Shown: positions 1,829 through 61,920 of the stretch, piece by piece | Numbering within the stretch: the stretch's first letter is position 1 | Layout: each line of letters begins with the position of its first letter | Assembly (NCBI GenBank): GCA_002269645.1 | Contig: NIVC01001335.1 | Location: 175,087 to 239,086, forward strand | Source: Macrostomum lignano | Lineage: Eukaryota | Direction: 5' to 3' | DNA length: 64,000 bases | The notes under the pieces: generated by a model | The model's input: only the letters and a program-made list of their open reading frames with translations | Told to the model about the DNA's origin: nothing | The model's database searches: none | Translations under genes and position numbers: made by a program

Positions 1829-14334
<12,506 letters not shown>

Positions 14335-17214: not shown

Positions 17215-17427
17215 TGTGGCGGCCAGACTGGTGCACGGTTGAGAGCGGGGCCCGCCTGTGCACAGGCCCCTGCACGCCTGGCTGCTGGGGAGTTTTGCCC
17301 AGCCAGCCAGTTCGCTCTGACTCACACCTCCCTATTCTCTCAAGTATAAAGACTATGCTTAAACAAATATACACAAGATCTTTTGCTTGCTTGCTGCTTT
17401 TCAAGCTTCCACTCGCAAGCCGCTTCA
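17215..17427 (+). repeat. 5' LTR
   Basis: Direct repeat of 21320-21532. Confidence 0.97.
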
Positions 17428-17457
17428 TTGGTGAGCCCTACGCAGCCATTTCGTGCA

Positions 17458-20400: not shown

Positions 20401-21032
20401 GACCGTTTCACCCGGTGGCCGGAGGCGATCCCGATGACCGACACCGATCCGCGGCCGCGTGCGCCTCCGCCTTCATCGCCCACTGGATCGCCAGGTTTGG
20501 AGTGCCAAGCGACATCACCTCGGACCGCGGCTCGCAGTTCACGTCGCTGCTGTGGTCCAACGTCTCACAGCTCCTCGGAATGCAGCTCCACCAGACAACG
20601 GCTTTCCATCCGCAGGCGAACGGGCTGGTCGAGCGTTTCCACCGGCAGCTGAAGTCCTCCCTCATGACGCGACTGGCCGGACCAGCCTGGGTCAGCGAGC
20701 TACCCTGGGTGCTGCTCGGCATCCGGACGGCCCCCAAGGAGGACCTGCCGGCATCGTCGGCCGAGCGGGTCTACGGAGCGCCCCTCTGCGTGCCTGGCGA
20801 GTGCCTGCAGCCCAGCCCGCCGGCCGGCGACCACGACCAGTTCCTCGCCCGGCTCCGCGGCGTCGTCCAGGCATTCCCGCCGACGTCCCGTCACGGCAGC
20901 CGCCCCACAGCTTGGCCGGCCGCCCTCGACGCCTGCCAGTTCGTTTTCGTCCGGCGCGACGGCCACCGCCCTCCGCTGCAGCGACCTTACGACGGCCCGT
21001 TCAAGGTCCTCGAGCGGGACGCCAAAGCTTGA
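17458..21032 (+). CDS. gag-pol polyprotein (Gag, protease, RT, RNase H, integrase with GPF motif); one programmed -1 frameshift plus three -1 lesions
   Basis: Motifs LKLPTFW, LVDTGA, DFRRLN, YIDD, DHKPL, integrase H-H-C-C, HVDLVGP, SDRGSQF, NGLVERFHR and PYDGPFKV. Confidence 0.92.
18140..18184 (+). promoter_or_regulatory. -1 programmed ribosomal frameshift signal (gag to pol)
   Basis: G GGA AAC heptamer in the gag frame, a 6-nt spacer, then a 10-bp stem GCCGGCCGTC/GACGGCCGGC. The -1 frame is the protease frame. Confidence 0.85.
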
Positions 21033-29764: not shown

Positions 29765-32092
29765 ATGGGGTTGCAAAGAGTCACACCGAAACTGTTCTTG
29801 ATGCTGGCTTTATTCGCGTTTCTAGCCGTTGTCTCCGCGGTGCCATCGACGGATCAGTCTGTGACAGAAGAGGCTAACAACAGTTCTCAGCTGCCGCTCT
29901 GTCGAGAGCAATCGCGCAATCATGAACCAGCAACAAGCGTATGCCAAGCGTCAGCCTGTGTTGCACTGTCTGCCGCTGTTTCTAGCAAGATGAATTTCAG
30001 CGCAAATCCATGCGTTGACTTTTACAACTACGCATGCGGCAACTTTCCAGTGAACTACAAATACGACCCCGATGAGGTTTTCAAGTCATTAAAGCAAACT
30101 GGCCCGACCTTCTACCAGAACTCCTACTCTGTGATGCGAAATCAACTACGCAGCAATCTGTTCGAAGTGCTGATGCTGGACTGGGTAGTCAACAGCACGG
30201 ATCCGAAAGTTAGAGACTTGTACAACCTTACAAGGATGCTTTTTCGCAGTTGCACCAAATGGATGCGCTACAGATCCATGAAAAATGACACTGTTGCGGC
30301 TCAGCGTTTCTTCTCTAGCCTTCTTAAGCATCTTGTTGAAGCCATCAGTCCAAGACGGTATAATCGGACAATAGAATCAATCCTAGCCCGCATTGTGAAT
30401 ACGGATGTCCATACCATGTTTGATGTCCGCGTGCCCTCATCATACATTCGGGAGCTGAAGCGAGGCGACAGCAATAAGCTAAGAAAGGCTAGCAGAGTGG
30501 TTATTTCGGCAAGTACAAAGCTCTACCACTCAATGTCCAATTTCGAGCCCATATTAACATTTTTCAGTTCTATTGGCGGAGCGACTGTTCTGACCATCGC
30601 TAACGAGAGTTCCAGTTTCAGTCGAGTTCTAAAACAGATCCAGCAGTCCGAACGATACGCTAATTGGTCGGATGGCTGCAGCAAGCTTGCCAAGCAACAG
30701 CAGCACAAGATCCGTGATCTAGATACGCTTAGTCAATGTGCAAACCCAGCCGATCCATTTTCGTGGAGCCTATTCTTTGACGAGCTGCTTCAGTCTGACT
30801 ACGACCCCAATGCCTTGGTGGAGCTGGAGAATCCAAAGCGAGTAATTAACTTTTTGACGTACTTCAAAAAGAAATCAACATATTCAGCCAGTAGAAAGCT
30901 CTCCATCTACCAAAGCTTTCTTGTTGTTGACTGGCTGCTAAGTTTTGCGAGGTTCCTACCCATGCGTTTAGAGCGCATGTGGACTGAGTCCCCCCTGAGA
31001 GAAGATGTGATGGATAAAGCAGTGGGGGGACCGGTAGATGCATGCATGAAGCGCACTAAAGACTTGCTGTCTCCAGTAGTTGAGCGAATGTATCAGAAGG
31101 CCTACCATGCAGAGAACTTTGAGCATGTGCAGAATTTGATCGACCTCCTGGAGAATGCAACAGTTAACAGCGTGCTTAATCAGGACTGGATAGAGCCGGA
31201 TACAAAGGATCTTATTATTGAAAAGCTTCTGTCGCTCAAGCACACAATAGGGTTTGAGGTCTTGTCAGCCGACCAACTTTCTGCGTACTATTCGCCTGCT
31301 ATTAATTCCTTTCGAAAAGGCCGATATTCGAAAGTCTCAGTGGATAAGGATTTTGGCAGGTTGTTCTCCATTGCGCTCTGGGCATCAGCACGAAAAAAGT
31401 TCGGCGTGCTATCGACGGAAAACAGCTCGGCTACCACAGCCTTTCTCACTTTAAGTGGCCTTACAACTAATGCGTACAACTACATGCGGCGCAACGAGAT
31501 CGTGTTTCCCATGGGAATACTGTCGCCTCCGATGTACCATAGGGACTATCCTGACTACATGAACCTGGGCGGCCTGGGATTGGTTGTTGGTCATGAAATC
31601 GGTCACGCATTCGACATCAAAGGCCGCCAGCTCAGCAAGGAGGGCATCCATGGTAACCACTGGGACAACCGGACCACCGAGGAGTACCTGCGCCGGGTCG
31701 AATGCGTGCGCTCTCGATACGGCTCCTATGAGCTGGTGCCCGGCGTACCGCACGGCTCCAATACGACTCTGGGCAATGACATCGCTGATCTCCTTGGTCT
31801 GAACGCAGCTTTTGGTGCCATGCAATTACAGGGCGAGACTGGTCGCCGGTGGCAGCTGCCGAACCTGCCATCTGAACTGACGCCCGAGCGACTGTTCTTC
31901 GTTCAAGTGGCGCAGGCCTGGTGCACAAAGGCCGAGCCAGCGGCTCTAAAGCGGCGCTTCAAGAACATCAAGCACAGCCCGCCGCATCTGCGCGTTCGCG
32001 GAATGATGGAGAATAGCAAAGGATTTGCCCAAGTCTTCCAGTGCGGAGTCCGGCAGCCGATGAACCCGAGTGAAAAGTGCTCGTTTTGGTAA
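29765..32092 (+). CDS. Intronless M13 (neprilysin/ECE-like) zinc metallopeptidase with N-terminal signal peptide
   Basis: NPCVDFYNYACG, HEIGH, FFVQVAQAWC, HSPPHLR, C-terminal PMNPSEKCSFW. Confidence 0.95.
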   Translation: MGLQRVTPKLFLMLALFAFLAVVSAVPSTDQSVTEEANNSSQLPLCREQSRNHEPATSVCQASACVALSAAVSSKMNFSANPCVDFYNYACGNFPVNYKYDPDEVFKSLKQTGPTFYQNSYSVMRNQLRSNLFEVLMLDWVVNSTDPKVRDLYNLTRMLFRSCTKWMRYRSMKNDTVAAQRFFSSLLKHLVEAISPRRYNRTIESILARIVNTDVHTMFDVRVPSSYIRELKRGDSNKLRKASRVVISASTKLYHSMSNFEPILTFFSSIGGATVLTIANESSSFSRVLKQIQQSERYANWSDGCSKLAKQQQHKIRDLDTLSQCANPADPFSWSLFFDELLQSDYDPNALVELENPKRVINFLTYFKKKSTYSASRKLSIYQSFLVVDWLLSFARFLPMRLERMWTESPLREDVMDKAVGGPVDACMKRTKDLLSPVVERMYQKAYHAENFEHVQNLIDLLENATVNSVLNQDWIEPDTKDLIIEKLLSLKHTIGFEVLSADQLSAYYSPAINSFRKGRYSKVSVDKDFGRLFSIALWASARKKFGVLSTENSSATTAFLTLSGLTTNAYNYMRRNEIVFPMGILSPPMYHRDYPDYMNLGGLGLVVGHEIGHAFDIKGRQLSKEGIHGNHWDNRTTEEYLRRVECVRSRYGSYELVPGVPHGSNTTLGNDIADLLGLNAAFGAMQLQGETGRRWQLPNLPSELTPERLFFVQVAQAWCTKAEPAALKRRFKNIKHSPPHLRVRGMMENSKGFAQVFQCGVRQPMNPSEKCSFW

Positions 32093-38900: not shown

Positions 38901-41900
38901 ATCTGATGCAGAGATCTGATGCAGAGAGATCTGATGCAGAGAGATCTGATGCAGAGAGATCTGATGCAGAGAGATCTGATGCAGAGAGATCTGATTCAGA
39001 GAGATCTGATGCAGAGAGATCTGATGGGGATCTGATGGGGATCTGATGCAGAGCGATCTGATGCAGAGAGATCTGATGCAGAGAGATCTGATGGGGATCT
39101 GATGGGGATCTGATGCAGAGAGATCTGATGGGGATCTGATGGGGATCTGATGGGGATCTGATGGGGATCTGATGGGGATCTGATGGGGATCTGATGGGGA
39201 TCTGATGGGGATCTGATGGGGATCTGATGGGGATCTGATGGGGATCTGATGCAGAGCGATCTAATGGTGAGAGATCTGATGCAGAGAGATCTGATGCAGA
39301 GAGATCTGATGCAGAGAGATCTGATGCAGAGAGATCTGATGCAGAGAGATCTGATTCAGAGAGATCTGATGCAGAGAGATCTGATGGGGATCTGATGCAG
39401 AGAGATCTGATGGGGATCTGATGGGGATCTGATGCAGAGCGATCTGATGCAGAGAGATCTGATGGGGATCTGATGCAGAGAGATCTGATGGGGATCTGAT
39501 GGGGATCTGATGGGGATCTGATGCAGAGAGATCTGATGGGGATCTGATGGGGATCTGATGCAGAGAGATCTGATGGGGATCTGATGGGGATCTGATGCAG
39601 AGAGATCTGATGGGGATCTGATGGGGATCTGATGCAGAGCGATCTGATGGGGATCTGATGCAGAGAGATCTGATGGGGATCTGATGCAGAGAGATCTGAC
39701 GGAGAAATCGGAGGGAGGAGATATGGAGAGAGGTCTGAGAGAGAGGTGGGAATGAGTTAGGTCTCTAAGATATCTGGGCAGCTTCTGAAAATGATTTAAA
39801 ATTTCACTTTCAACTGACAGTTTTGATTGGATTTTTCTGCAATCGGCTGTCGTGCAAATTAATAATGCAACGACAAGTCACTGGAAGTGAAGTGGGGCGT
39901 CACTCAACAAGCGGCCACATCGAATAGCGCAGTCAATCAAATTGAGGCTTCAGCAGTTTGGCACGCAGGCATTCAGTTCAGCCTGGTGCCTGCTGCAAGC
40001 TTTTTATGACGCTCTTCTGCCGCTCAGCGCCCCAGTGGGATTCCCAAGAAATCCCGCACTCTCCAAAAAACAGAAGCCAGCTTTTATACCTGTTATTGAG
40101 CCAGACGCAGATTCGGGTGAACACAAGGCTACTAAAATTATTTTTATGAAAAGACACTTTTCTAAATAATATTGTGCTTCGAAGAAAAATATGGGAGGGA
40201 CGCGGGATAAAACCATCAGCCACTGAGTTAAATCAAGTGTGTACAGAGAGATAAGAACCCGCAGCCACTGAGTTAAATCAAGTGTGTACAGAGAGATAAG
40301 AACCCGCAGCCATAGAGTTCAATCAAGTGTGTACAGAGAGATAAGAACCCGCAGCCACTGAGTTAAATCAAGTGTGTACAGAGAGATAAGAACCCGCAGC
40401 CATAGAGTTCAATCAAGTGTGTACAGAGAGATAAGAACCGGCAGCCACTGAGTTCAATCAAGTGTGTACAGAGAGATAAGAACCGGCAGCCACTGAGTTC
40501 AATCAAGTGTGTACAGAGAGATAAGAACCGGCAGCCACTGAGTTCAATCAAGTGTGTACAGAGAGATAAGAACCCGCAGCCATAGAGTTCAATCAAGTGT
40601 GTACAGAGAGATAAGAACCGGCAGCCACTGAGTTCAATCAAGTGTGTACAGAGAGATAAGAACCGGCAGCCACTGAGTTCAATCAAGTGTGTACAGAGAG
40701 ATAAGAACCGGCAGCCACTGAGTTCAATCAAGTGTGTACAGAGAGATAAGAACCGGCAGCCATAGAGTTCAATCAAGTGTGTACAGAGAGATAAGAACCC
40801 GTAGCCATAGAGTTCAATCAAGTGTGTACAGAGAGATAAGAACCGGCAGCCATAGAGTTCAATCAAGTGTGTACAGAGAGATAAGAACCCGCAGCCATAG
40901 AGTTCGATCAAGTGTGTACAGAGAGATAAGAACTGGCAGCCATAGAGTTCAATCAAGTGTGTACAGAGAGATAAGAACCCGCAGCCATAGAGTTCAATCA
41001 AGTGTGTACAGAGAGATAAGAACCCGCAGCCATAGAGTTCAATCAAGTGTGTACAGAGAGATAAGAACCCGCAGCCATAGAGTTCAATCAAGTGTGTACA
41101 GAGAGATAAGAACCGGCAGCCACTGAGTTCAATCAAGTGTGTACAGAGAGATAAGAACCGGCAGCCACTGAGTTCAATCAAGTGTGTACAGAGAGATAAT
41201 AACTGGCAGCCATAGAGTTCAATCAAGTGTGTACAGAGAGATAAGAACCCGCAGCCATAGAGTTCAATCAAGTGTGTACAGAGAGATAAGAACCGGCAGC
41301 CATAGAGTTCAATCAAGTGTGTACAGAGAGATAATAACTGGCAGCCATAGAGTTCAATAAAGTGTGTACAGAGAGATAAGAACCCGCAGCCATAGAGTTC
41401 AATCAAGTGTGTACAGAGAGATAAGAACCGGCAGCCATAGAGTTCAATCAAGTGTTTACAGAGAGATAAGAACCGGCAGCCATAGAGTTCAATAAAGTGT
41501 GTACAGAGAGATAAGAACCGGCAGCCATAGAGTTCAATCAAGTGTGTACAGAGAGATAATAACTGGCAGCCATAGAGTTCAATCAAGTGTGTACAGAGAG
41601 ATAAGAACCCGCAGCCATAGAGTTCAATCAAGTGTGTACAGAGAGATAAGAACCGGCAGCCATAGAGTTCAATCAAGTGTGTACAGAGAGATAAGAACCC
41701 GCAGCCATAGAGTTCAATCAAGTTTGTACAGAGAGATAAGAACCGGCAGCCATAGAGTTCATTTAATTGTGCACAGAGAGAGAAGAATTCATTAAAATTA
41801 ACCGCTTAACAATCGCACCAATAGGGGCCCAGTGTGCAACTTATATCTGGTAAATATTTTTCCTTCACCAGTGCCACCAGTCAGCACAGGAGTCTAGCCA

Positions 41901-44264: not shown

Positions 44265-46138
44265 AAAATCCCAAAACACCCACGGAATCCCAAAACACCC
44301 ACGGAACCCCAAAACACCCACGGAACCCCAAAACACCCACGGAACCCCAAAACACCCACGGAACCCCAAAACACCCACGGAACCCCAAAACACCCACGGA
44401 ACCCCAAAACACCCACGGAACCCCAAAACACCCACGGAACCCCAAAACACCCACGGAACCCCAAAACACCCACGGAACCTCAAAACACCCACGGAACCCC
44501 AAAACACCCACGGAACCCCAAAACACCCACGGAACCCCAAAACACCCACGGAACCCCAAAACACCCACGGAACCCCAAAACACCCACGGAACCCCAAAAC
44601 ACCCACGGAACCCCAAAACACCCACGGAACCCCAAAACACCCACGGAACCCCAAAACACCCACGGAACCCCAAAACACCCACGGAACCCCAAAACACCCA
44701 CGGAACCCCAAAACACCCACGGATCCCAAAACACCCACGGATCCCAAAACACCCACGGGATCCCAAAACACCCACGGGATCCCAAAACACCCACGGAACC
44801 ACAAAACACCCATGGAATCTCAAAACACCCACGGGATCCCAAAACACCCACGGAACCCCAAAACACCCACGGAACCCCAAAACACCCACGGAACCACAAA
44901 ACACCCATGGAACCCCAAAACACCCACGGAACCCCAAAACACCCACGGGATCCCAAAACACCCACGGGATCCCAAAACACCCACGGATCCCAAAACACTC
45001 ACGGAACCCCAAAACACCCACGGAACCCCAAAACACCCACGGGATCCCAAAACACCCACGGAATCCCAAAACACCCACGGAATCCCAAAACACCCACGGA
45101 ACCCCAAAACACCCACGGAACCCCAAAACACCCACGGGATCCCAAAACACCCACGGAACCCCAAAACACCCACGGAACCCCAAAACACCCACGGAACCCC
45201 AAAACACCCACGGAACCCCAAAACACCCACGGAACCCCAAAACACCCACGGAACCCCAAAACACCCACGGAACCCCAAAACACCCACGGATCCCAAAACA
45301 CCCACGGGATCCCAAAACACCCACGGGATCCCAAAACACCCACGGAACCACAAAACACCCATGGAATCTCAAAACACCCACGGGATCCCAAAACACCCAC
45401 GGAACCCCAAAACACCCACGGAACCCCAAAACACCCACGGAACCACAAAACACCCATGGAACCCCAAAACACCCACGGAACCCCAAAACACCCACGGGAT
45501 CCCAAAACACCCACGGGATCCCAAAACACCCACGGATCCCAAAACACTCACGGAACCCCAAAACACCCACGGAACCCCAAAACACCCACGGGATCCCAAA
45601 ACACCCACGGAATCCCAAAACACCCACGGAATCCCAAAACACCCACGGAATCCCAAAACACCCACGGAACCCCAAAACACCCACGGAACCCCAAAACACC
45701 CACGGGATCCCAAAACACCCACGGAACCCCAAAACACCCACGGGATCCCAAAAGACCCACGGATCCCAAAACACTCACGGAACCCCAAAACACCCACGGG
45801 ATTCCAAAACACCCACGGGATCCCAAAACACCCACGGAATCCCAAAACACCCACGGAATCCCAAAACACCCACGGAATCCCAAAACACCCACGGAACCCC
45901 AAAACACCCACGGAACCCCAAAACACCCACGGAACCACAAAACACCCACGGAACCCCAAAACACCCACGGAACCCCAAAACACCCACGGGATTCCAAAAC
46001 ACCCACGGAACCCCAAAACACCCACGGAACCCCAAAACACCCACGGGATCCCAAAACACCCACGGAACCCCAAAACACCCACGGAACCCCAAAACACCCA
46101 CGGAATCCCAAAACACCCACGGAATCCCAAAACACCCA
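44265..46138. repeat. 19-bp minisatellite (CACGGAACCCCAAAACACC)n with higher-order block duplication
   Basis: Period 19. The rare variant CATGGAATCTC recurs at 44811 and 45360. Confidence 0.95.
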
Positions 46139-50412: not shown

Positions 50413-52903
50413 ATGACCACAAGATTTATCGCGGCAAGCTGCTACATCCTTGTTATGCTGAGCGGCGCCACGCTGACAATTTTCACGGTGCTGTCGCAGA
50501 GCCTCAGGCGCAAAGTGCGCACCAAGGACATTTCCAAGGACGTGTCCAACATCGACTGCATCATGTACAAGGCCACCATGCTCGGCTTCGTGATCAACGG
50601 GGAGAGCATGGCGGGTAAGACAAGGGCGTGGTTTTGGGGATGGCAGTAGGTAATGGCACAGGGGATGGCAGAGGGGATGGCAGAGGGGATGGCAGAGGGG
50701 ATGGCAGTAGGTAGTGGCACAGGGAATGGCACAGGGGATGGCACAGGGGATGGCACAGGGGATGGCACAGGGGATGGCACAGGGAATGGCAGTAGGTAGT
50801 GGCACAGGGAATGGCACAGGGGATGGCACAGGGGATGGCACAGGGGATGGCAGAGGGGATGGCACAGGGGATGGCACAGGGATTGGCACAGGGAATGGCA
50901 CAGGGGATGGCACAGGGGATGGCACAGGGGATGGCACAGGGAATGGCACAGGGAATGGCAGTAGTTAATGGCACAGGGAATGGCAATAGGTAATGGCACA
51001 GGGGATGACAGTAGGCAATGGCACAGTGAATGGCAGTAGGTAATGGCACAGGTAATGGCACAGGGGATGACAGTAGGGAATGGCATAGGGAATGGCACTG
51101 GGAATGGCACTGGGAATGGCACTGGGAATGGCACAGTGAATGGCACAGGGAATTGCACAGGGAATGGCAGTAGCTGGTGACGCAGCAGGTCTTTCACCCC
51201 ACCTGCTCAACGCCCAGTCGGCCTGATGGGCTTCTTTGCCACGGTGCTTCGCTTTCGCCAAGTTGAAAATGTGGTGTGCGGCCTGAGCTTCCTGCTGGCC
51301 AACGTGTACATCCTGATGACCGTGGCCATCACCAGGACCGACCCGCTGGTGCCCAAACTGCTGGGTAAGCGCCTGCTCTGCTGCTTGGAACTGGAACAGG
51401 AACCGGACAGAATGGGGACAGGAACCGGACAGAATGGGGATAGAAACCGGACAGAATGGGGATAGAAACCGGACAGAATGGGGACAGAAACCGGACAGAA
51501 TGGGGATAGAAACCGGACAGAATGGGGATAGAAACCGGACAGAATGGGGATAGAAACCGGACAGAATGGGGATAGAAACCGGACAGAATGGGGATAGAAA
51601 CCGGACAGAATGGGGACAGAAACTGGAAAGAATGAGGACAGGAACCGGACAGAATGGGGATAAAAACCGGACAGAATGGGGGCAGAAGCCGGGCAGAAGC
51701 CGGGCAGAAACTGGACAGAAACTGGACAGGAACCGGACAGAAACCGGACAGAATGGGACCAGAAGCCGGACAGAAACTGGAAAGGAACTGGACAGAAACT
51801 GGGCAGAAACTGAACAGAAACTGGACAGAAACTGGGCAGAAACTGGGCAGAAACTGGACAGAAACTGGACAGAAACTGGGCAGAAACTGGACAGAATGGG
51901 GGCAGAAGCCGGGCAGAAGCCGGGCAGAAACTGGACAGAAACTGGACAGGAACCGGACAGAAACCGGACAGAATGGGACCAGAAGCCGGACAGAAACTGG
52001 AAAGGAACCGGGCAGAAACTGGACAGGAACCGGACAGAATGGGGGCAGAAGCCGGACAGAAACTGGAAAGGAACCGGGCAGAAACTGGACAGGAACCGGA
52101 CAGAATGGGGGCAGAAGCCGGACAGAAACTGGACAGAAACCGGACAGAAACTGGACAAAATGGGGGCAGAAGCCGGACAGAAACTGGACAGAAACCGGAC
52201 AGAAACGGGATAGAAACCGGACAGAATGGGAACGAACAGAAACAGGACAGAAACTGGACAGAATGGGGGCAGAAGCCGGACAGAAACTGGACAGAAACCG
52301 GACAGAAACGGGATAGAAACCGGACAGAATGGGAACGAACAGAAACAGGACAGAAACTGGACAGAATGGGGGCAGAAGCCGGACAGAAACTGGACAGAAA
52401 CCGGACAGAAACGGGATAGAAACCGGACAGAATGGGAACGAACAGAAACAGGACAGAAACTGGACAGAATGGGGCAGAAGCCGGACAGAAACTGGACAGA
52501 AACCGGACAGAAACGGGATAGAAACCGGACAGAATGGGAACGAACAGAAACAGGACAGAAACTGGACAGAATGGGGGCAGAAGCCGGACAGAAACTGGAC
52601 AGAAACCGGACAGAAACGGGATAGAAACCGGACAGAATGGGGGCAGAAGCCGGACAGAAACTGGACAGAATGGGAACAGAAGCCAAATGCTACTCCGCAC
52701 TGCTCTTAGAGAGAAATTTTCTATTGGACGACGTCAACGTGGAGGTGGTGCAGAAGTGCCTCGAATTGGTGCCGTGGCCCGTCGACTCAGTCGTGGTGGT
52801 GGTGCTGCTGCTGTGCTACCTGAGAGTTTTCCAGTCCATCTGCTGTCTGCTGTACCTGAGGAACAGCTCATTGCTGCCTTACTACTTCGCCTCGGACAAT
52901 TGA
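50413..52903 (+). CDS. Four-transmembrane tetraspanin-like protein. Exons: 50413-50614, 51218-51364, 52710-52903
   Basis: Phase-1 GT-AG introns (G|GTAAG donors) join into one ORF with four hydrophobic helices, including a GLMGFFA TM2 motif. There is no CCG motif. Confidence 0.65.
50638..51172. repeat. 12-bp minisatellite (GGCACAGGGGAT)n
   Basis: Fills intron 50615-51217. Confidence 0.95.
51395..52680. repeat. Composite 11/22-bp minisatellite (AACCGGACAGA / AACTGGACAGA / ATGGGGATAG) with ~100-bp higher-order blocks
   Basis: Fills intron 51365-52709. Confidence 0.95.
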
Positions 52904-53213
52904 AAAGTTGACAGTTAACAACAGCAGTTATTTACAGTTTGCTTATTAAAGCGTTCATATTTAAAATATTTAGCCAATAAATCTCAAATCCGGCTTTGCA
53001 AATTGTTGTTGCGTTTGTCTACTATAAGTAGCCTAGACTGATGAGGATAACTTTTCCTTAAAGACCAGATGAAAATTGTATTTATAAAGTGAGCCTTACA
53101 AGTAGATACTCGTAATTATTACTCGTAATTGGTTATAAATCGCGAGCTTATGAAACAGTCAACAACGTCGCTCATTTACGCATGATCAGGTTAACTTCAG
53201 GTACCCAGCAGCT

Positions 53214-53708
53214 TCACGGGTACTTGATGATGGTGATCTCCATGTCGCGGTACTCGAAGGTGCCCTCCTGAAGGTTCACGTAGTAGGCGGTGTCGGTGAT
53301 GTAGGAGACGCCGTCGCCGCGCAAGGAGGCCGACACGGACACCGAGTGGGGCATGAAGGGCGTGTCCGCGGGAATCACCGCCTCCAGGCTGAAGGGGATC
53401 CGGCGGTCGGCGTTGTATCTCGTCGACACCGCGTTGAGCGTCTGGCTGCCAAGCAGCTTCGACGGCGCGTCCATCAGCGAGATGTCCTGTAGGCGAACTT
53501 CGAGACGGGCGTTGACTGGCAGCTGCTGCGGTGCCGGGTTCAGCAGGACGTAGCCGGAAACGCGGACGGTGCGGCCGGAGCCGGAGTCGGTGATGGACTC
53601 GGAGCCGGAGCCGCCCCTGTTGCCGCTGTTGCAGCTGTGGCCTGTCCGCAGCGAGGCAGCCAGCACGGTGAGCGCCAGAGCCAGACTGAGCTGCAGTTTG
53701 AGCGCCAT
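53214..53708 (-). CDS. Intronless secreted protein with a YbaY/YscW (pilotin-like) domain
   Basis: Signal peptide, Gly/Ser linker, then VSG.V...LP.NARLEVRLQDISLMDAPSKLLG...IPFSL...SVSASL..DG..YITDT, matching the recalled bacterial YbaY motifs (LxDVSLADAPSKVL, PFxF, FITDT). Confidence 0.8.
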   Translation of the reverse strand: MALKLQLSLALALTVLAASLRTGHSCNSGNRGGSGSESITDSGSGRTVRVSGYVLLNPAPQQLPVNARLEVRLQDISLMDAPSKLLGSQTLNAVSTRYNADRRIPFSLEAVIPADTPFMPHSVSVSASLRGDGVSYITDTAYYVNLQEGTFEYRDMEITIIKYP

Positions 53709-54233
53709 TCCGAGACTTGCAGGGGGTTCTAAGTAAAGCTTGCTTGTGTTAAAAAATCAGCTAAGAAGGGCCGGCTCTCTGAGTTGTCGGAGCTGGCCGC
53801 GAGTTGCCGCGCCATAAATACAGAGCTGGCACCGTGCGAGATTTCTTATCTAATCAGCTTGTTGTTTTTGCTGGCCTCTCTTATCGAGCTCGAGAGCAGA
53901 CTGTTTTGGCGCAGATTTGCCTGCAGGTGACCCACTCTGCAGAAATGCTTATGCGCACTAGATTGCACTGCTCTGCATTGTTCTGCGGTGCGGGGTGCAC
54001 CGGAAAAGCATGGTGCTGCCCTCTGACTCTCTCATACACACACCTGTCAGCAGGTCACTGTAGAGGTGACTAAGCTTGACCCGATCGATAGGCATCGAGG
54101 CTTCGCTTCGATTTGCTTGGCAGCCCTGCTGCCGGGGAAAAATTCGCCGGATTGGCCGCCGAATGGCTGACCGAATCAGAAATGCACGAGCGGGCCCTGA
54201 CTGGCCTGGATTTGGGCAGGTCAGCTGCGGGCG

Positions 54234-56964
54234 ATGTGCCGGTCTGCCGCCAGCCTGCCAGCTCGTCCTAGCCTCTCCATGCTCATCTCCCTAATGCTGC
54301 TACAGCAGCTTCTGCTGGCGGCTCACTGCCGCCAGCAGCTGTTCTGTCGCGACGGCGTCTTCAACTTGGCCATCGTGCAGAATTCTGAGTTCAACTGCCT
54401 GGCCAGCGCCGAGGCGGAGTTTCCCATCACGGAGGCGCAGTTCTTGCGAGGACTCGCCGTCCACTTTGCTGTCGACAGAATCAACAGGGAGCAGCTGCGC
54501 CCGGAGCTGCGCGCACGTGGATGGACGTTCGGCTTCGTCCATTTGGACCCCTGCATGTCGTCAGCCGCAGCCGTCAGTCTGACGAAGAACCTGCGCCCTG
54601 CCTGGCAGCACGGCGCCCTTGCAGCCGGAGGCGCCTTCTGCTCTCAGCGGCTCAGCGGCATCGAGGAGTCGGTCTATCTCATTCAGGCCGCTGCGGCCGC
54701 CTGGTACAGCAGCACCACGGACATCGTGTCACGTCTGCTGTCGCCCTACCAGCTGCCGCAGGTGTCCACCGAGTCCAGCAGCGACGCGTTCTCGGACCGG
54801 GAGCGGTACCCGAACGTCTACCGGCTGGTGTCACCGGATCGCCACCAGGCCAGAGCCGCGGTGCAGCTGGTGCGCCACTTCGGCTGGACCTACGTGGCCA
54901 TCATCCACAGAGACGACGTGTACGGGAGGGGCCTCGCGCACAACACCAGGCTCCTACTGGCTGCAGCACCGAGCGAAGGAGGCAACTCCAGCGAATCCGC
55001 TGCACCGGTGTGCGTTGCCTTCACCCTGGCGTTGAACCAGCTCACTTCCGTATCCGACGCGCTGGACGCCATCGACTCTCGGCAAAACTTGACCGTGTTT
55101 CTCGTGTACGAACTATTCAGCCTGGTGCCCGACAGGCTGCTTGCCCGCATCGCCTCCCGCGGTGGCACCATCATCACCTCCGACACGAACGCCGATTCGT
55201 ACAAAGACTACACTCGGGGCGCCTTCTACGTAGCCTTTCCGCAGTTTCCCGTGCCAGACTTGCTCCGCTTTTACCACTCGTTGAACCTCGCCCAGCTGGT
55301 GGAGTTCCCGTTCGGCTTTCAGCTGCAGAAGGTTCTCTCCGTTGGCAATTGCACAGCTGCTGGCAACGTCACATCAGCTGGGTGCAGTGCCAAGGTCGCC
55401 TCTCTGTCGCGTTTAAGCCTCAACGTTAAAGTGGCTCCGCTGGCTCGCATGCTGGACTCGCTGACGCTCATCGCCGACAGCGTCCAATCGGTCGCCCTAA
55501 GCGAAGAGTGTCAGCCGAGCGTCGCAGAGGGAAACCTCAGCCAGCTACTCAGCTGCATCACTGGCCCTCGAATTTCCACCCTCATTGCTGCGTCAAATTT
55601 TTCAACAACAGCTCGCCGGCATTTTATCGCTGACTTTGACGGCTTCGACTCCAGCGGCGATGCCGCGCCTGCCTACGACGTGCGCCGCGAGGAAGCCGAC
55701 AGCGAGCTCAAATTGTTCGCCCGATGGACGCAGCGCTCCAGCCTGAGGGTTTGGGACAACGAAACTGCCGCACCGGCGGCCTCGTTCTGCAGCCCGCCCT
55801 GCCCAGCCGGCCACATCCGGGTGCCCAGCGACGCCTGCTGCTTCACCTGCCGCGCCTGCTTCCCGGGCGAAATCGCCGGTTCGGACGGCCTCGCCTGCCT
55901 GCCCTGCCCAACGTTCCTCTGGCCAGAGGCCGAGACCTGCCAGCGGTTGCCTGTCGCCGGCTGGAACGAAGATCTCCTGCTGCCGGGGCTCCTGGTGTGC
56001 GCGGCCCTCCTGGCCACACTGACACTGACTGCGCTGCTGTTGCTGCTGCACCGGCGGGAGCATCGGCTAGTCAAGGCGTCCTCGGTGCAGCTGTCGGTAA
56101 GACTGGTGGCATTTGTTAGTGTGGAACTCGAACTACCATTTTAAATTGTTTCCGACAGGTGGCCTGCCTTTGCGGCAGCCTTCTCGGTCTGTCCGGCCTG
56201 GCACCCATCGCAGTTGAGGCTTCCGACGTCGCCTGCTGCTGCGCGAACGCCGCCACCCAGCTGGGCCTGTCGGTTTGCTACTGCAGCCAGCTGGTGAAGA
56301 CACTGCGCATCCTGCTGGTGTTCAGAGCGTCCGGGGCGGGCCGGCCGACGCCGCAGTTGGCAAGGCAGCGCCCGATTTCTGCGATGCTGGCTGGTCTCGT
56401 CCTGCTGATGGTGAGGCATGGGGATCTGGGATGCTGACCGGCCTTATCAACCCAACAACTACCTGTCCATTTATACAAAACATTGCAGACTGGCATCATC
56501 ATTGGGCTCAGTCTCCGCTGGCCCGTGCAGTCGCGCATCCGTCAGTCGGCCTCGACAACGTCTGACTCAAAGCCGTGGGTGGAGCGGCAGTGCGACCTCA
56601 TGACCGTCAGCTTCTGGGCTCCGCTAGGCTGCAACTTGACCCTACCGGTATTGGGCACCACCTGCCTGCTGGCGCTGCGGACCCGTCAACTGCCCGACAA
56701 TTTTCACGACAGCAAGTGCATCCTGGCGGCCGGCGCCTCCGCGCTCTTCCTCTGGGCGGCATTCACCCGGCTGCGTTGACGGCAACCACATTGGCCACCG
56801 CCGTCAAGTTGATGGTGTTCTCTTGCGTGCTGACCCACGGTCTGCTGCTGGCCATCATGTTCGCGCCGAAGCTTTACGCAGCCTACGCCGTGCCAGAGGC
56901 GCAGTGCAACGTCAAGTTCTACACCGCCAATAACGGCGTATCTTGCAGCAACGAGATGGCCTGA
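54234..56964 (+). CDS. Class C GPCR (mGluR/CaSR/taste-receptor-like: Venus flytrap, nine-cysteine domain, 7TM). Exons: 54234-56096, 56159-56410, 56489-56964; one -1 lesion near 56765
   Basis: PQVS...SDRERYPN..R, FGWTYVAII...DVYG, nine-Cys CSPPC...CCFTCRAC...CLPC...C, LVKAS, LVKTLRI, RQLPDNFHDSKCI and FAPKLY. The start may be ATG 54279. Confidence 0.93.
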
Positions 56965-56994: not shown

Positions 56995-57465
<471 letters not shown>

Positions 57466-60380: not shown

Positions 60381-61920
60381 ATGGAGAGCCAAAACAAAAG
60401 CGGCGGGAGCGAAACGGAGCGAGGAGTTAAGCTGGGCGTCGATCTCGGACTCGGACTGTGCGCTGGAGTCCTGATTTACCTTCTGGTGTGGCTCTGGGTC
60501 AAGGTGGCGAGCGTACTGGCCGCGCCACTCATCTGCACCGGAGTCAAAGGTCAGCACGGACCGTGGGGCTTCCCGGTGATCGGCCACCTGCCCAGGTTGG
60601 GCACCCAGCCGCACATCCGCCTGCTGGAGTGGTCGCGAGTGTACGGCAACATTTATTTCATCCGAATGGGTCTCTGGCCTGCTCTGGTGGTCAACGGCAC
60701 GGCTGCGATCCGACATGTGCTCACCGAGCACGGCAGGGACATCTGCGACCGGCCGGACTGGAACACCTTCCGCACAATCAGCGGCGGCCGCTCAGTTGCC
60801 TTCGGTTCTGGCAGCTGGTACCTGCGCGATCGCCGCCTCATGCACGCCGGGCTGATTCGCTACGACAGGCGCTACTCCGGCCTGGTCGAGGAGCTCGCCT
60901 CCGAGGAGACGGCGCGCCTTGTCGATGGACTTCTAGGCGAAGGCACCGACGGCCCAGTGAGCAGCATGCGCCACTTGAAGAAGTGGATGAGCTCCATCCT
61001 GTACTCTGTGCTGCACGCTCGCACTCCGGGCTGGTTCGAGAGGTGCATCAGCAACCCGGACTCGCCGTTCACGAAGGTGGTTGACGCGGTGCACTCGCTA
61101 GGAAACAACAACTCCCTGCTGCTCTGCCTGGCTGACATGGTGCCGCCAGTTGCCCGCCTGCTGCCGGGTCGGCTGGCCGAGTTCAAGAGCGTGTCCGACC
61201 AAGTCGACTCGGCAATAGTGGACCTGGTCCATCGCGACGCCGAGAGCCGTCAACCGGGGGAGGCGGCTCGCTGCCTATCGACGAGTTTGGAGACGTCTGC
61301 AACAACGAAACGGCCGGACGGCTGCTCACGGACATCATGGGCGCCTCGGTCAGCACCACGGTGTCGGTTGTGCGCTGGATTCTGTACTACCTGGCGATGC
61401 ACCCAAACTGGCAGGCCAGTGTAGTCGACGAGCTTCGGGAGCAGCTCGGACCGGGCCGGACCGCCATCAGCTGGGCGAGCGACAGCAGCTGCCGAAGCTG
61501 CGCGCCTTTATTGCCGAGGTGCTGCGGCACTCATGCGGCCTGCTGTTCCTCATCCCGCACTGCGCTGTGAGGGACTTCACGCTGGAGTGCGGCACCAGGG
61601 TGGCCAAGGGAACCATCGTGCTCTGCAACATGTGGTCGGCCAGTCGGGACGCCTCGCTGTGGTCCGAGCCGGACGCCTTCCAGCCAGGGCGCTTCCTGGA
61701 CGAGGAGGGCGCCTTCCTAGAGGCGGCCGGCGCCGCGTTTCCCGCATTCGGGGCCGGCTTCCGCAAGTGCGCCGGCAGTAAGCTGGCGATGCAGCTGCTG
61801 TACAATTTCACTCTGCGCCTGCTGCTCGAGTGCCGGGTGGAGTCCACCGGGGGGCCCATGCCCTTCCACTACGACGTGTCGCCACTGGGAATCGAGGCGC
61901 CCGAGTTCCGCTGCGGCTGA
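60381..61920 (+). CDS. Intronless cytochrome P450, clan 2 (CYP1-like), with two -1 lesions (~61285, ~61480)
   Basis: TM anchor, GPWGFPVIGHL, RPDW, I-helix DIMGASVSTT, K-helix EVLR, PGRF, and heme motif FGAGFRKCAG. Confidence 0.92.

What the first reader, a model, noticed from the sequence alone, without database searches (positions are those of the whole stretch)
53214..53708. Bacterial-type YbaY/YscW pilotin-like domain in an animal gene: horizontal-transfer candidate
Seen: an intronless 164-aa ORF with signal peptide, Cys26, Gly/Ser linker and a beta-rich domain, embedded between spliced animal genes and with similarly GC-rich codons. Established (recalled): LxD(I/V)SLxDAPSK, PFxL/F and (F/Y)ITDT are hallmarks of bacterial YbaY lipoproteins related to T3SS pilotin YscW. 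The bacterial lipobox is not canonical here (GHSC). Inference: an ameliorated bacterial gene repurposed as a secreted animal protein of unknown function. Its distribution in other eukaryotes must be checked before claiming novelty.
Basis: partly seen in the sequence, partly recalled or inferred. Interest (0 to 1): 0.8.

Follow-up and report, generated by a model that had tools for sequence, protein, structure and literature searches.

The report
Flatworm gene with bacterial YbaY domain
A small secreted-protein gene of the flatworm Macrostomum lignano does carry a domain otherwise typical of bacterial envelope lipoproteins, but it belongs to a small, undescribed animal family that reef corals also have, so it is not a fresh bacterial import.

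Summary
Window 53214-53708 (-) is an uninterrupted 164-aa ORF with a hydrophobic leader, Cys26, a Gly/Ser linker and a beta domain. The domain passes Pfam YscW/YbaY (36.1 bits; cut-off 22.6). Its AlphaFold model matches only the Vibrio cholerae pilotin-type lipoprotein 5wec. It is a real M. lignano nuclear gene: three collinear copies lie on three large contigs, flanked by spliced animal genes, with host-like codon usage and transcript-derived gene models. The reading "a bacterial gene that entered this flatworm" is only partly right. Domain for domain, its closest relatives are animal proteins: a second, leaderless M. lignano paralogue (in tandem pairs) and a multi-copy family of membrane-anchored coral proteins (Montipora and unnamed relatives). 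A mosaic protein from an unidentified eukaryote, with Kazal and thyroglobulin-1 domains, also belongs. These form a clade (NJ bootstrap 0.85) apart from 51 bacterial domain segments. Bacterial relatives span many phyla at 28-41% identity, so no donor is visible. An ultimately bacterial origin is plausible but old. Pilotin function is unlikely. The nearest bacterial relatives are orphan YbaY-type lipoproteins, often fused to MliC or META. The most likely role is a secreted, non-catalytic binding module, possibly a hydrolase binder or inhibitor. That function is inferred, not shown.

The parts
53214..53708 (-). Complete single-exon CDS (164 codons plus TGA) of the YbaY/YscW-domain protein; GenBank models BOX15_Mlig025402 on the homeologous copies
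   Evidence: ORF listing. An exact product is called on NIVC01001335.1. An in-frame stop lies 17 codons upstream. pN/pS is 0.24 against the homeologous copy.
53634..53708 (-). N-terminal leader, residues 1-25: MALK, then the hydrophobic core L5-S19, then RTGHS. Predicted secretory signal peptide, with cleavage after S19 or S25 (inferred).
   Evidence: The most hydrophobic 15-residue window is 5-19, mean 1.89. pLDDT is below 50 for residues 1-34. The -3/-1 rule was applied by eye.
53571..53633 (-). Cys26 plus the Gly/Ser-rich, probably disordered linker (residues 26-46). 'GHSC' does not fit the bacterial lipobox L-[AS]-[GA]-C.
   Evidence: Sequence; low pLDDT.
53217..53570 (-). YbaY/YscW-type beta-sandwich domain (residues 47-164, 8 predicted strands)
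   Evidence: Pfam PF09619 over residues 48-148, 36.1 bits. AlphaFold2 model. Foldseek 5wec_A E 2.6e-7, TM 0.75 normalised to the target.
53457..53492 (-). Family hallmark motif LQDISLMDAPSK (residues 73-84), in the turn between predicted strands 2 and 3
   Evidence: Conserved in bacterial, fungal and animal-type members (alignments).
53217..53252 (-). Last beta strand with the animal-type signature: Y153 and Y163 in 'EY..DMEITIIKY'
   Evidence: Y153 is present in 94% and Y163 in 100% of the other 18 animal-type segments, and in 0 of 51 bacterial segments.
53709..54233 (.). 525-bp head-to-head intergenic region shared with the class C GPCR gene; presumed promoter and 5'UTR. A TATA-like TATTTAT lies at 53814-53820 (minus strand), 106-112 nt upstream of the ATG (inferred only).
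   Evidence: Sequence. The region is conserved in the other two copies. No sigma-70-like promoter or intrinsic terminator was found in 52900-54250.

Best explanation
**What it is.** This is a genuine, transcribed nuclear gene of Macrostomum lignano, present once in each of three homeologous genome copies. It encodes a small secreted protein made of a signal peptide, a Cys and Gly/Ser linker, and one YbaY/YscW-type beta-sandwich domain.

**Where it belongs.** It is the 'A-type' member of a small, previously undescribed animal-type branch of this otherwise bacterial domain family. Other members of that branch are:
- a leaderless 'B-type' paralogue in M. lignano, found as tandem pairs;
- a multi-copy family of type II membrane-anchored proteins in stony corals;
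- repeat and mosaic proteins (thyroglobulin-1, Kazal and YscW-like units) from an unidentified eukaryote.

**Origin.** The branch most likely descends from an old bacterium-to-eukaryote transfer. The gene has since acquired eukaryotic targeting signals and host codon usage. It is not a recent import into the flatworm.

**How it most likely works (inferred).** The leader directs the protein into the secretory pathway and is cleaved. The roughly 14-kDa beta-sandwich is released outside the cell and acts as a non-catalytic binding module. Animals have no secretins, so it cannot act as a pilotin. Judging by its fusion partners, the most likely target is an extracellular hydrolase, which it would bind, inhibit or shield against. 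The partners are the lysozyme inhibitor MliC in bacteria and the protease-inhibitor domains Kazal and TY1 in the eukaryotic mosaic.

**My sub-probabilities.**
- Domain identity: above 0.95.
- Real flatworm gene: above 0.95.
- Member of the animal-type clade: about 0.75.
- Ultimately bacterial origin: about 0.7.
- Hydrolase-binding or inhibitor role: about 0.25.
For: **Identity**
- Pfam YscW 36.1 bits against a cut-off of 22.6.
- PDB 5wec by sequence and by fold. Its two chains are the only Foldseek hits with E below 1e-3.

**Real gene**
- Three copies lie on contigs of 239, 244 and 109 kb, with flanks collinear over about 20 kb at 93-98% identity. This fits the three subgenomes reported for this line (PMC10733133).
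- Between two copies there are 6 synonymous and 4 non-synonymous differences, giving pN/pS 0.24.
- The GenBank models of this assembly derive from RNA-seq transcripts (PMC5730564).
- RSCU correlation with the flanking genes is r = 0.88.
- No bacterial promoter or terminator signals surround the gene.

**Animal-type clade**
- The exhaustive phmmer search found a second M. lignano paralogue, Montipora proteins and related unnamed proteins.
- The profile search returned 23 hits: 22 coral-type proteins, of which 21 are 43-96% identical over full length to the Montipora protein (the other, P0088, reads 44% but was listed twice, so it is unverified), plus the M. lignano copy P0001.
- Single-domain scores are coral 48.0 bits, paralogue B 43.7 bits, best bacterial 39.5 bits.
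- NJ bootstrap for the animal-type clade is 0.85.
- Two Tyr residues are shared with 94-100% of animal-type segments and 0 of 51 bacterial segments.
- Paralogue B is 39-40% identical to coral proteins (E about 1e-25) and 35% identical to the window protein.

**Old origin, no donor**
- 123 bacterial or archaeal loci from many phyla matched. The 80 best kept are 28-41% identical.
- No relatives were found in viral contigs or in BFVD.

**Function**
- Of the 80 nearest bacterial genes, 15 are fused to MliC and 17 to META.
- No secretion-system family is among the 25 most frequent of the 94 families hit by 112 flanking ORFs.
- P0095 has the layout TY1-Kazal-YscWL, Kazal-YscWL, TY1-Kazal-YscWL.
- The bacterial P0035 lies 47 bp downstream of an astacin protease gene.
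Against: - The tree is neighbour-joining on about 117 columns of a short, divergent domain. Branching inside the clade is unresolved (MLIG+CNID bootstrap 0.02).
- The margin between the best animal and the best bacterial single-domain score is modest (48.0 against 39.5 bits).
- The window protein keeps three bacterial-like residues (A66, Q89, E157) and lacks the 'NVGW..W.KGD' insertion that all other animal-type members share. It could therefore be a separate acquisition from a related donor.
- Whole-protein E-values rank the multi-repeat proteins first: P0003, which is animal-type, then the bacterial repeat lipoproteins.
- A vertical history needs many losses across animals.
- Only Montipora is named among the coral-type proteins. 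The organism behind P0003 and P0095 is unknown.
- Coverage of other flatworms in the searched collections is unknown.
- There is no direct evidence of expression, secretion or a ligand.
- The hydrolase-inhibitor idea rests only on domain co-occurrence and one gene adjacency.
- B-type paralogues lack a leader, so the family is not uniformly extracellular.
Confidence: 0.6

Rival explanations
1. Recent, lineage-specific horizontal transfer of a bacterial ybaY-like lipoprotein gene directly into the Macrostomum lineage, followed by amelioration.
For: - The gene is intronless.
- A Cys directly follows the leader, like a lipoprotein +1 Cys.
- The window protein scores better against Pfam YscW (36 bits) than the coral proteins (about 21-25 bits) or paralogue B (24 bits).
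- It lacks the animal-type insertion and keeps three bacterial-like residues.
- Whole-protein E-values favour bacterial proteins over the named coral cluster, 4e-10 against 9e-6.
Against: - The best single-domain hits are animal proteins.
- The animal-type clade has bootstrap 0.85.
- Y153 and Y163 are shared only with animal-type members.
- No bacterial relative exceeds 41% identity, and no phylum stands out.
- Codon usage is fully host-like.
- All three homeologous copies carry the gene in conserved synteny, so it predates the genome duplication.
- A divergent paralogue exists at another locus.
Confidence: 0.15
2. Independent acquisitions, or eukaryote-to-eukaryote spread. Corals, the flatworm A-type, the flatworm B-type and the unknown eukaryote each obtained the domain separately from closely related, unsampled marine bacteria or from each other. 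Under this view there was no single ancient animal gene.
For: - The distribution is extremely patchy: only corals, one flatworm, one unknown eukaryote and, as a separate clade, Mortierellales fungi appear among 1.84 billion representatives.
- The fungal clade (bootstrap 0.84) shows that eukaryotes acquired the domain at least twice.
- Genes are intronless in both corals and the flatworm.
- Some short bacterial proteins (P0035, P0030) carry a shorter insertion at the same place, ending in the same 'GD(Y/W)'.
Against: - The shared derived Tyr residues and the shared insertion are absent from all 51 sampled bacterial segments.
- No viral carrier was found.
- Grouping of P0030 and P0035 with the animal clade has only 0.27 support.
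Confidence: 0.2
3. Assembly artefact or contamination: a bacterial read or contig wrongly joined to flatworm DNA.
For: The Mlig_3_7 assembly is reported to have many chimeric scaffolds between subgenomes (PMC10733133).
Against: - Three independent contigs carry the gene in the same place, with flanks collinear for about 10 kb on both sides.
- GC3 and RSCU are host-like.
- The flanks are AT-rich eukaryotic sequence with minisatellites.
- The gene models are transcript-derived.
- The nearest bacterial identity is at most 41%.
Confidence: 0.01
4. A true pilotin-like chaperone: the protein binds a secretin, for example of a bacterial symbiont or pathogen, either as a decoy or to help assembly.
For: - The only solved structural relative is annotated as a T2SS pilotin.
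- The Pfam family is named after the T3SS pilotin YscW.
- A secreted host protein that mimics a pilotin could in principle interfere with secretin assembly.
Against: - No secretion-system genes lie near the gene.
- None appear among the 25 most frequent families in 112 ORFs flanking its nearest bacterial relatives.
- Those relatives are YbaY-type orphan lipoproteins fused to MliC, META or NlpE.
- From general knowledge, secretins assemble in the periplasm, which a host protein cannot reach.
- There is no lipid anchor.
Confidence: 0.03

Closest known systems
PDB 5wec, 'alternative pilotin from the type II secretion system of Vibrio cholerae' (a YbaY-like lipoprotein), and the chromosomal Vibrio ybaY-like genes (L011-L014)
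   Same: - About 28% identity, with the same hallmark motifs (LQDVSLADAP, SVSARI, FITDT).
- Same beta-sandwich fold: TM 0.75 normalised to the target, E 2.6e-7.
- Vibrio genes are the best named bacterial matches, at 37-39% identity.
   Different: - The bacterial proteins are lipoproteins with a lipobox; the flatworm protein has a eukaryote-type leader and 'GHSC'.
- The flatworm protein carries the animal-type Tyr signature in the last strands.
- The genomic setting is animal genes, whereas the Vibrio genes lie next to the acyl-CoA thioesterase gene tesB.
E. coli YbaY and the wider bacterial YbaY-like lipoproteins (single-domain, multi-repeat, or fused to META, MliC, NlpE or fasciclin)
   Same: - Same Pfam domain (PF09619).
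- Extracytoplasmic location.
- Non-catalytic small beta domain.
- Orphan genomic context without secretion systems.
   Different: - The function of YbaY itself is unknown, so nothing functional can be transferred; literature searches found nothing.
- The flatworm protein is single-domain, unlipidated and eukaryotic.
T3SS pilotins YscW (Yersinia) and ExsB (Pseudomonas), the namesakes of PF09619
   Same: Homologous domain according to Pfam.
   Different: - Pilotins are defined by lipidation, outer-membrane targeting and a cognate secretin encoded in a T3SS cluster. None of this applies here.
- ExsB did not appear among the top 50 Foldseek matches listed.
Coral 'uncharacterized proteins' (Montipora capricornis XP_068754246, M. 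foliosa XP_068699677 and unnamed relatives) and M. lignano paralogue B (PAA66317, PAA94389)
   Same: - Same animal-type clade (bootstrap 0.85).
- Shared Y153/Y163 signature.
- Full-length domain alignment at 27-36% identity.
- Single-exon genes.
   Different: - Coral proteins have an N-terminal cytoplasmic tail and a transmembrane anchor (Kyte-Doolittle about 3.2) in place of a cleavable leader.
- B-type has no leader at all.
- Both have the 'NVGW..W.KGD' insertion that the window protein lacks.
- Most score at or below the Pfam cut-off, so they are largely unannotated.

Membership tests
Pfam PF09619 (YscW / YbaY-like domain family) | Significant match to the family HMM above the curated gathering score | tested here: met
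   36.1 bits against a cut-off of 22.6, E 8.9e-9; residues 48-148 match profile positions 4-98 of 107.
Pfam PF09619 (YscW / YbaY-like domain family) | Hallmark motifs L-x-D-[VI]-S-L-x-D-A-P, P-F-x-[LF] and [FY]-[IV]-[TS]-D-T in the right order | tested here: met
   LQDISLMDAPSK at 73-84, IPFSL at 104-108, YITDT at 136-140. They align with bacterial, fungal and animal members.
Pfam PF09619 (YscW / YbaY-like domain family) | Beta-sandwich fold like a solved member | tested here: met
   AlphaFold2 model of the domain (10-residue block pLDDT 69-93, mostly 78-93). Foldseek 5wec_A E 2.6e-7, TM 0.75 normalised to the target; its two chains are the only hits with E below 1e-3.
Bacterial YbaY-type outer-membrane lipoprotein | Lipoprotein signal peptide with a lipobox (L-[AS]-[GA]-C) and a lipidated +1 Cys | tested here: not met
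   The residues before Cys26 are G-H-S, which does not fit the lipobox. From general knowledge, animals lack the Lgt/LspA lipoprotein pathway.
Secretin pilotin (YscW/ExsB of T3SS; 5wec-type of T2SS) | Encoded with, and acting on, a cognate secretin of a T2SS or T3SS | tested here: not met
   The neighbours are a class C GPCR, a P450, an M13 peptidase, a kinase and a retroelement. No secretion-system family is among the 25 most frequent in 112 ORFs flanking the nearest bacterial relatives.
Secretin pilotin (YscW/ExsB of T3SS; 5wec-type of T2SS) | Binds the secretin S-domain and promotes outer-membrane assembly | not testable with these tools
   This needs binding and assembly assays.
Animal-type YscW-like clade (proposed here: M. 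lignano A and B types, coral family, P0003/P0095) | Groups with these sequences, apart from bacterial and fungal ones, in a phylogeny | tested here: met
   NJ bootstrap 0.85 for the clade of 20 segments. The nearest sequences by distance and by single-domain score are paralogue B and coral proteins. NJ only; no ML tree was available.
Animal-type YscW-like clade (proposed here) | Signature Tyr residues in the last two strands ('EY' and the final '[KR]Y') | tested here: met
   Y153 is in 94% and Y163 in 100% of the other animal-type segments, and in 0 of 51 bacterial segments.
Animal-type YscW-like clade (proposed here) | 'NVGW(K/C)..(5-7)..W(I/V).(K/R)GD' insertion before the [FY]xTDT strand | tested here: not met
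   The window protein has 'SLRGDGVSYITDT' with no insertion. This fits an early-branching or derived member, and it is the main reason membership is not certain.
Horizontally transferred gene of bacterial origin (recent, lineage-specific) | Closest relatives are bacterial; the gene nests inside a bacterial clade; it is absent from other animals | tested here: not met
   The closest single-domain relatives are animal proteins. Homologues occur in corals and as a second flatworm paralogue. Bacterial identity is at most 41%, spread over many phyla.

The most novel reading that the evidence does not exclude
A bacterial envelope-lipoprotein domain (YbaY/YscW) was captured early in animal evolution, or spread among marine invertebrates. 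It then founded a new family of secreted, membrane-anchored and cytosolic beta-sandwich proteins. The family survives only in a few lineages: stony corals, macrostomid flatworms and at least one unidentified eukaryote. Its conserved job, in bacteria (MliC fusions) and in eukaryotes (Kazal/thyroglobulin-1 mosaics), would be to bind or inhibit extracellular hydrolases. That would make it a new class of proteinaceous hydrolase inhibitor shared across kingdoms.
Probability: 0.15. Interest if true: 0.7.

Novelty: new variant of a known kind. Interest (0 to 1): 0.5.

Why it matters
The YbaY/YscW domain is treated as a bacterial envelope module, and the searchable literature describes no eukaryotic members. 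This work shows a coherent animal-type branch. It has its own sequence signature, eukaryotic targeting variants (cleavable leader, type II anchor, none) and mosaic architectures, and it sits in bona fide animal chromosomes.

That gives three things:
- A clean, testable case of domestication of a prokaryotic domain in animals, with an unusually patchy distribution.
- A handle on the unknown function of YbaY itself. Its partner domains in both kingdoms (MliC, Kazal, TY1) point to hydrolase inhibition.
- A practical caution for HGT screens. Whole-protein E-values and alien indices are inflated by repeat-containing bacterial hits. They can make an old, family-level event look like a recent lineage-specific transfer.

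M. lignano is amenable to transgenesis and RNAi, so function can be tested directly.

Tried and rejected
- **NCBIfam scan of the protein:** no family matched.
- **Word-indexed homologue search with the single protein:** found only the M. lignano copies, so the exhaustive HMMER search was needed.
- **Viral vector idea:** there are no relatives in 2.9 million viral contigs and no BFVD structural match below E 1e-3. Rejected.
- **Bacterial regulatory relics:** no sigma-70-like promoter or intrinsic terminator around the gene, and no Shine-Dalgarno-like AGGAGG before the ATG.
- **Identifying the organism behind P0003 and P0095:** the search gave only P0095. The transcript-like contigs show no shared 5' leader or poly-A tail. 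The organism remains unknown.
- **Upstream exon for a coral-like membrane anchor:** tblastn found none upstream of paralogue B or of the window gene.
- **First bacterial-genome scan:** alignment A3 failed for lack of a conserved stretch. It was repeated with A4.
- **Biopython bootstrap:** it timed out and was replaced by a numpy NJ bootstrap.
- **C-terminal tail as an animal-specific extension:** I first thought so. The alignments show it is the homologous last strand, differing only in its signature residues.
- **Literature:** searches on YbaY, PF09619, Mlig025402, M. lignano HGT and pilotins found nothing on eukaryotic members or on YbaY biochemistry.
- **Conserved gene neighbourhood of bacterial relatives:** nothing recurs beyond tesB and ogt in some lineages.
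Full report
**1. The observation**

Window 53214..53708 (minus strand) is an ATG-initiated ORF of 164 codons. An in-frame stop lies 17 codons upstream of the ATG.
- a hydrophobic leader (L5-S19, mean Kyte-Doolittle 1.89);
- Cys26 in 'GHSC';
- a Gly/Ser-rich stretch at residues 27-46;
- LQDISLMDAPSK at residues 73-84, IPFSL at 104-108 and YITDT at 136-140.

**2. Whose genome, and is the gene really part of it?**

The protein is 98% identical to the Macrostomum lignano hypothetical protein BOX15_Mlig025402g1. The exact product is called on contig NIVC01001335.1 of assembly GCA_002269645.1, so the window is M. lignano.

Two further copies lie on contigs NIVC01001733.1 (244 kb) and NIVC01003246.1 (109 kb). 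All three loci are collinear for about 10 kb on each side, at 93-98% identity. This fits the three homeologous subgenomes (S, L1, L2) described for this inbred line (PMC10733133).

The window around the gene is clearly animal:
- A class C GPCR (ANF_receptor + NCD3G) starts 525 bp away, head-to-head with the gene. Its 7TM segments continue in other frames.
- A cytochrome P450 is split over two ORFs.
- There is also an M13 peptidase, a protein kinase, a gypsy-type pol and many minisatellites.

Codon usage matches the flanking genes (RSCU r = 0.88; GC3 0.90 against 0.58-0.83), and the immediate flanks are 34-55% GC. No bacterial-type promoter or terminator signals are present.

Two copies differ by 6 synonymous and 4 non-synonymous changes, giving pN/pS 0.24. 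The counts are small, but the direction indicates constraint. The third copy has a 1-nt deletion in the CDS, which explains the frameshifted GenBank model 'g2'. This could be a PacBio indel or a real pseudogene.

The GenBank annotation of this assembly was built from RNA-seq-derived transcripts (PMC5730564). The existence of gene models is therefore indirect evidence of transcription. Contamination or a chimeric join is effectively excluded.

**3. What the domain is**

- Pfam YscW (PF09619) matches residues 48-148 at 36.1 bits, against a gathering cut-off of 22.6 (E 8.9e-9). NCBIfam has no match.
- The only PDB sequence hit is 5wec (E 2e-4).
- An AlphaFold2 model built on a 24-sequence family alignment gives a confident eight-strand beta domain. 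pLDDT is below 50 for residues 1-34 and block means are mostly 78-93 for residues 51-164.
- Foldseek against the PDB returns only the two chains of 5wec with E below 1e-3 (E 2.6e-7, TM 0.75 normalised to the target). 5wec is annotated as 'alternative pilotin from the type II secretion system of Vibrio cholerae'. Everything else is generic beta-sandwich similarity.

**4. Relatives**

An exhaustive phmmer search of 1.84 billion cluster representatives gave 36 hits with E at or below 1e-3. Only the M. lignano copies scored below 1e-10. The other hits fall into three groups:

- **(a) Bacterial YbaY-type lipoproteins.** Most have 2-5 tandem copies of the domain; a named example is an Anaerolineae MAG protein.
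- **(b) Two-repeat proteins of the mucoromycote fungus Gamsiella multidivaricata** and unnamed proteins that group with them.
- **(c) Animal-type proteins.** This group holds:
  - a second M. lignano protein (PAA66317 and PAA94389, here called 'paralogue B');
  - a cluster containing Montipora capricornis XP_068754246 and M. foliosa XP_068699677, on scaffolds of more than 70 Mb;
  - related unnamed proteins on ENA contigs of 0.6-1.6 Mb;
  - P0003, a 956-aa five-repeat protein from a JGI sample.

A profile search with the animal-type alignment returned 23 hits, 22 of them coral-type proteins. 21 of these are 43-96% identical over their full length to the Montipora protein (P0088's 44% appears twice and is unverified). 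Two further coral-type sequences in that comparison, P0032 (41%) and the shorter P0011, come from the exhaustive search. All share an N-terminal basic tail followed by a strongly hydrophobic anchor, which is type II topology by the positive-inside rule (inferred).

On the large coral-like contigs these genes are single uninterrupted ORFs and occur in several copies, some of them domain-only.

Paralogue B lies next to a Meis/PKNOX homeobox gene and has an unannotated tandem twin 0.9 kb upstream (88% identity). Both copies start MSQQPIRVHG shortly after an acceptor-like (T)nCAG. The upstream copy has an in-frame stop between that site and the ATG. B-type proteins therefore have no leader.

**5. 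Where the window protein sits**

Whole-protein E-values seem to favour bacteria. The best bacterial hit is 4e-10 and the Montipora cluster is 9e-6, an 'alien index' of about +10. This is an artefact of summing over repeats.

When every domain copy is scored on its own, the order reverses:
- coral proteins 48.0 and 45.5 bits;
- paralogue B 43.7 bits;
- best bacterial segment 39.5 bits.

A neighbour-joining tree of 78 domain segments (117 columns) places the window protein in a clade with paralogue B, the coral proteins and the P0003 repeats. Bootstrap support is 0.85. The fungal proteins form a separate clade at 0.84. Branching inside the animal-type clade is unresolved.

A tree-independent test agrees:
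- Y153 and Y163 in the last two strands occur in 94% and 100% of the other animal-type segments, and in 0 of 51 bacterial segments.
- Conversely, the window protein keeps three bacterial-like residues and lacks the 'NVGW..W.KGD' insertion that all other animal-type members share.

Paralogue B is closer to coral proteins (39-40% identity, E about 1e-25) than to the window protein (35%). The simplest reading is that the window gene ('A-type') is an early-branching or fast-evolving member of the animal-type clade.

**6. Origin**

The domain is widespread in bacteria. A scan of one genome per species found 123 loci, and the 80 best were kept. They come from Vibrio, Variovorax, Caulobacter, Inquilinus, Microbulbifer, Rhodococcus, Acidobacteriota, Chloroflexota and Longimicrobiaceae, plus one Methanosarcinaceae MAG. 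Identity is only 28-41%, usually over query residues 19-112.

No donor lineage stands out, and no viral carrier was found. Given the breadth in bacteria and the patchiness in eukaryotes, a bacterium-to-eukaryote direction is the reasonable inference, and it happened at least twice (fungal and animal-type clades). For the animal-type clade the event is old. My data cannot decide between one ancient acquisition followed by many losses and repeated transfer among marine lineages.

It is wrong as a statement about a recent event in this flatworm.

**7. How it most likely works**

*Shown:*
- The domain has no catalytic signature. It is a compact beta-sandwich behind a flexible linker.
- The A-type has a leader.
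- There is no lipobox.
- No secretion-system genes are nearby.

*From the bacterial side:*
- Among the 80 nearest bacterial genes, 67 match YscW. Of the 80, 17 are fused to META, 15 to MliC (the membrane-bound inhibitor of C-type lysozyme), 2 to NlpE_C and 1 to fasciclin.
- The 112 flanking ORFs hit 94 Pfam families. None of the 25 most frequent is a secretin or another T2SS/T3SS component.
- These relatives are therefore orphan YbaY-type envelope lipoproteins, not pilotins.

*From the eukaryotic side:*
- P0095, from the same sample as P0003, is a mosaic of three units. Each combines Kazal, with or without thyroglobulin type-1, and a YscW-like domain.
- One leaderless bacterial member lies 47 bp downstream of an astacin protease gene.

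*Inference:*
- The flatworm protein is secreted. After leader cleavage it acts as a non-catalytic binding module.
- The recurring company of proteinaceous hydrolase inhibitors (MliC, Kazal, TY1) makes hydrolase binding or inhibition, or protection against hydrolases, the best single guess. I put it at about 0.25.
- A generic role in binding microbial or matrix ligands is the fallback.
- The single Cys26 could mediate disulfide dimerisation.
- A pilotin-like role is very unlikely.

**8. Comparison with known systems**

By sequence and fold it is a member of PF09619. It fails the defining features of a bacterial lipoprotein (lipobox) and of a pilotin (cognate secretin). It is therefore 'a YbaY/YscW-domain protein', not 'a pilotin'.

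Within the family it belongs, with one unmet feature (the insertion), to an animal-type branch that I could not find described anywhere. Searches for YbaY, PF09619, the gene identifier and HGT in M. lignano found nothing relevant.

Most coral members score at or below the Pfam cut-off and are annotated only as 'uncharacterized protein'.

**9. Caveats**

- The phylogeny is NJ on a short domain.
- Only Montipora is named among the coral-type sequences.
- The organism behind P0003 and P0095 is unknown.
- Coverage of other flatworms in the searched collections is unknown. The word-indexed searches evidently miss some known members, so absence elsewhere in animals is not proven.
- The signal peptide was not tested with a dedicated predictor.
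- Expression is inferred from how the annotation was made.

**10. Verdict**

This is a new, eukaryotic variant of a known bacterial domain family. It is of moderate interest as a domestication case and as a lead to the unknown function of YbaY.

Noticed in passing
window 54234-~57000 (+): A class C GPCR gene (ANF_receptor + NCD3G in a 636-aa first exon; 7TM segments continue in other frames) sits head-to-head 525 bp from the YbaY-like gene. It is not among the genes called on this contig in the public annotation.
   Followed up: partly
window 60381-61920 (+): A cytochrome P450 is split over two ORFs (Pfam profile positions 3-249 and 332-438). It is also absent from the called-gene list for the contig.
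   Followed up: partly
window 29765-32092 (+): An M13 (neprilysin-like) peptidase is encoded by one uninterrupted 775-aa ORF. Intronless genes are therefore not exceptional in this window, and intronlessness is not in itself a sign of HGT here.
   Followed up: partly
window 17383-20652 (+): An intact 1089-aa gypsy-type retroelement ORF (DUF7041, RVT_1, RNase H, integrase zinc-binding domain), with 68% GC.
   Followed up: no
window, throughout (e.g. 6048-7927, 40206-41787, 44270-46138, 50636-51169, 51396-52670, 57075-57464): The window is riddled with long minisatellite arrays (31 TRF rows with score of at least 400; units of 3-238 bp, up to 147 copies). They produce many long spurious ORFs and extreme GC/AT skews. 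The annotated 180-aa gene just downstream of the YbaY-like gene (window ~50413-52903) spans two such arrays.
   Followed up: no
L003 10001-10570 (contig NIVC01003246.1): The third homeologous copy has a 1-nt deletion in the CDS (GGAGGCGGTG to GGAGGC-GTG) and another in a C-run of the 5' UTR. This explains the frameshifted GenBank model Mlig025402g2. Whether it is a PacBio indel error or a real pseudogene is undecided.
   Followed up: partly
L007 9078-9482 and 10023-10423 (contig NIVC01001569.1): Paralogue B occurs as a tandem pair, and the upstream copy is unannotated (134 aa, 88% identical). Both lack a signal peptide. Each is preceded by an acceptor-like (T)nCAG, which suggests trans-spliced, possibly polycistronic, expression. 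A Meis/PKNOX homeobox gene lies upstream.
   Followed up: partly
L010 373-2778 (P0095) and L008 109-2979 (P0003), JGI sample 3300061880: An unidentified AT-rich eukaryote encodes two relatives. One is a mosaic protein of three units, each with Kazal, with or without thyroglobulin-1, and a YscW-like domain. The other is a five-repeat Cys-rich YscW-like protein. IMG annotates both as 'lipoprotein YbaY'.
   Followed up: partly
L009 794-2894: A leaderless bacterial single-domain member (P0035) lies 47 bp downstream of a 563-aa astacin metalloprotease gene on the same strand. This may be a protease/partner pair.
   Followed up: no
L004 (960-1823, 8001-8864, 15612-16007) and L006 (8001-8813, 14027-14410, 15427-16506): Coral-type loci carry several copies within about 15 kb, including domain-only copies without the membrane anchor. 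In L006 an ORF with a YqaJ-like recombinase domain lies next to one copy.
   Followed up: no
P0008, P0025, P0027, P0036 (Gamsiella multidivaricata KAG0368272 / XP_051411312 and unnamed relatives): Two-repeat YscW-domain proteins, named for Gamsiella (Mortierellales) only in the P0008 cluster, form their own clade (bootstrap 0.84). This is a second, independent eukaryotic occurrence of the domain.
   Followed up: partly
L049 (JAHREI010000002.1, labelled Bacillus subtilis strain SK6B4): This contig carries a YscW-META gene and neighbours at the same coordinates as the Pseudochrobactrum and Rhizobiales loci L050-L052. The record may be mislabelled or contaminated.
   Followed up: no
L015, L025, L058 and 12 further bacterial loci: MliC (lysozyme inhibitor) and YscW domains are fused in one lipoprotein in Candidatus Acidoferrales (MliC first) and in Zobellella (YscW first). 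Alphaproteobacteria have YscW-META fusions instead.
   Followed up: partly
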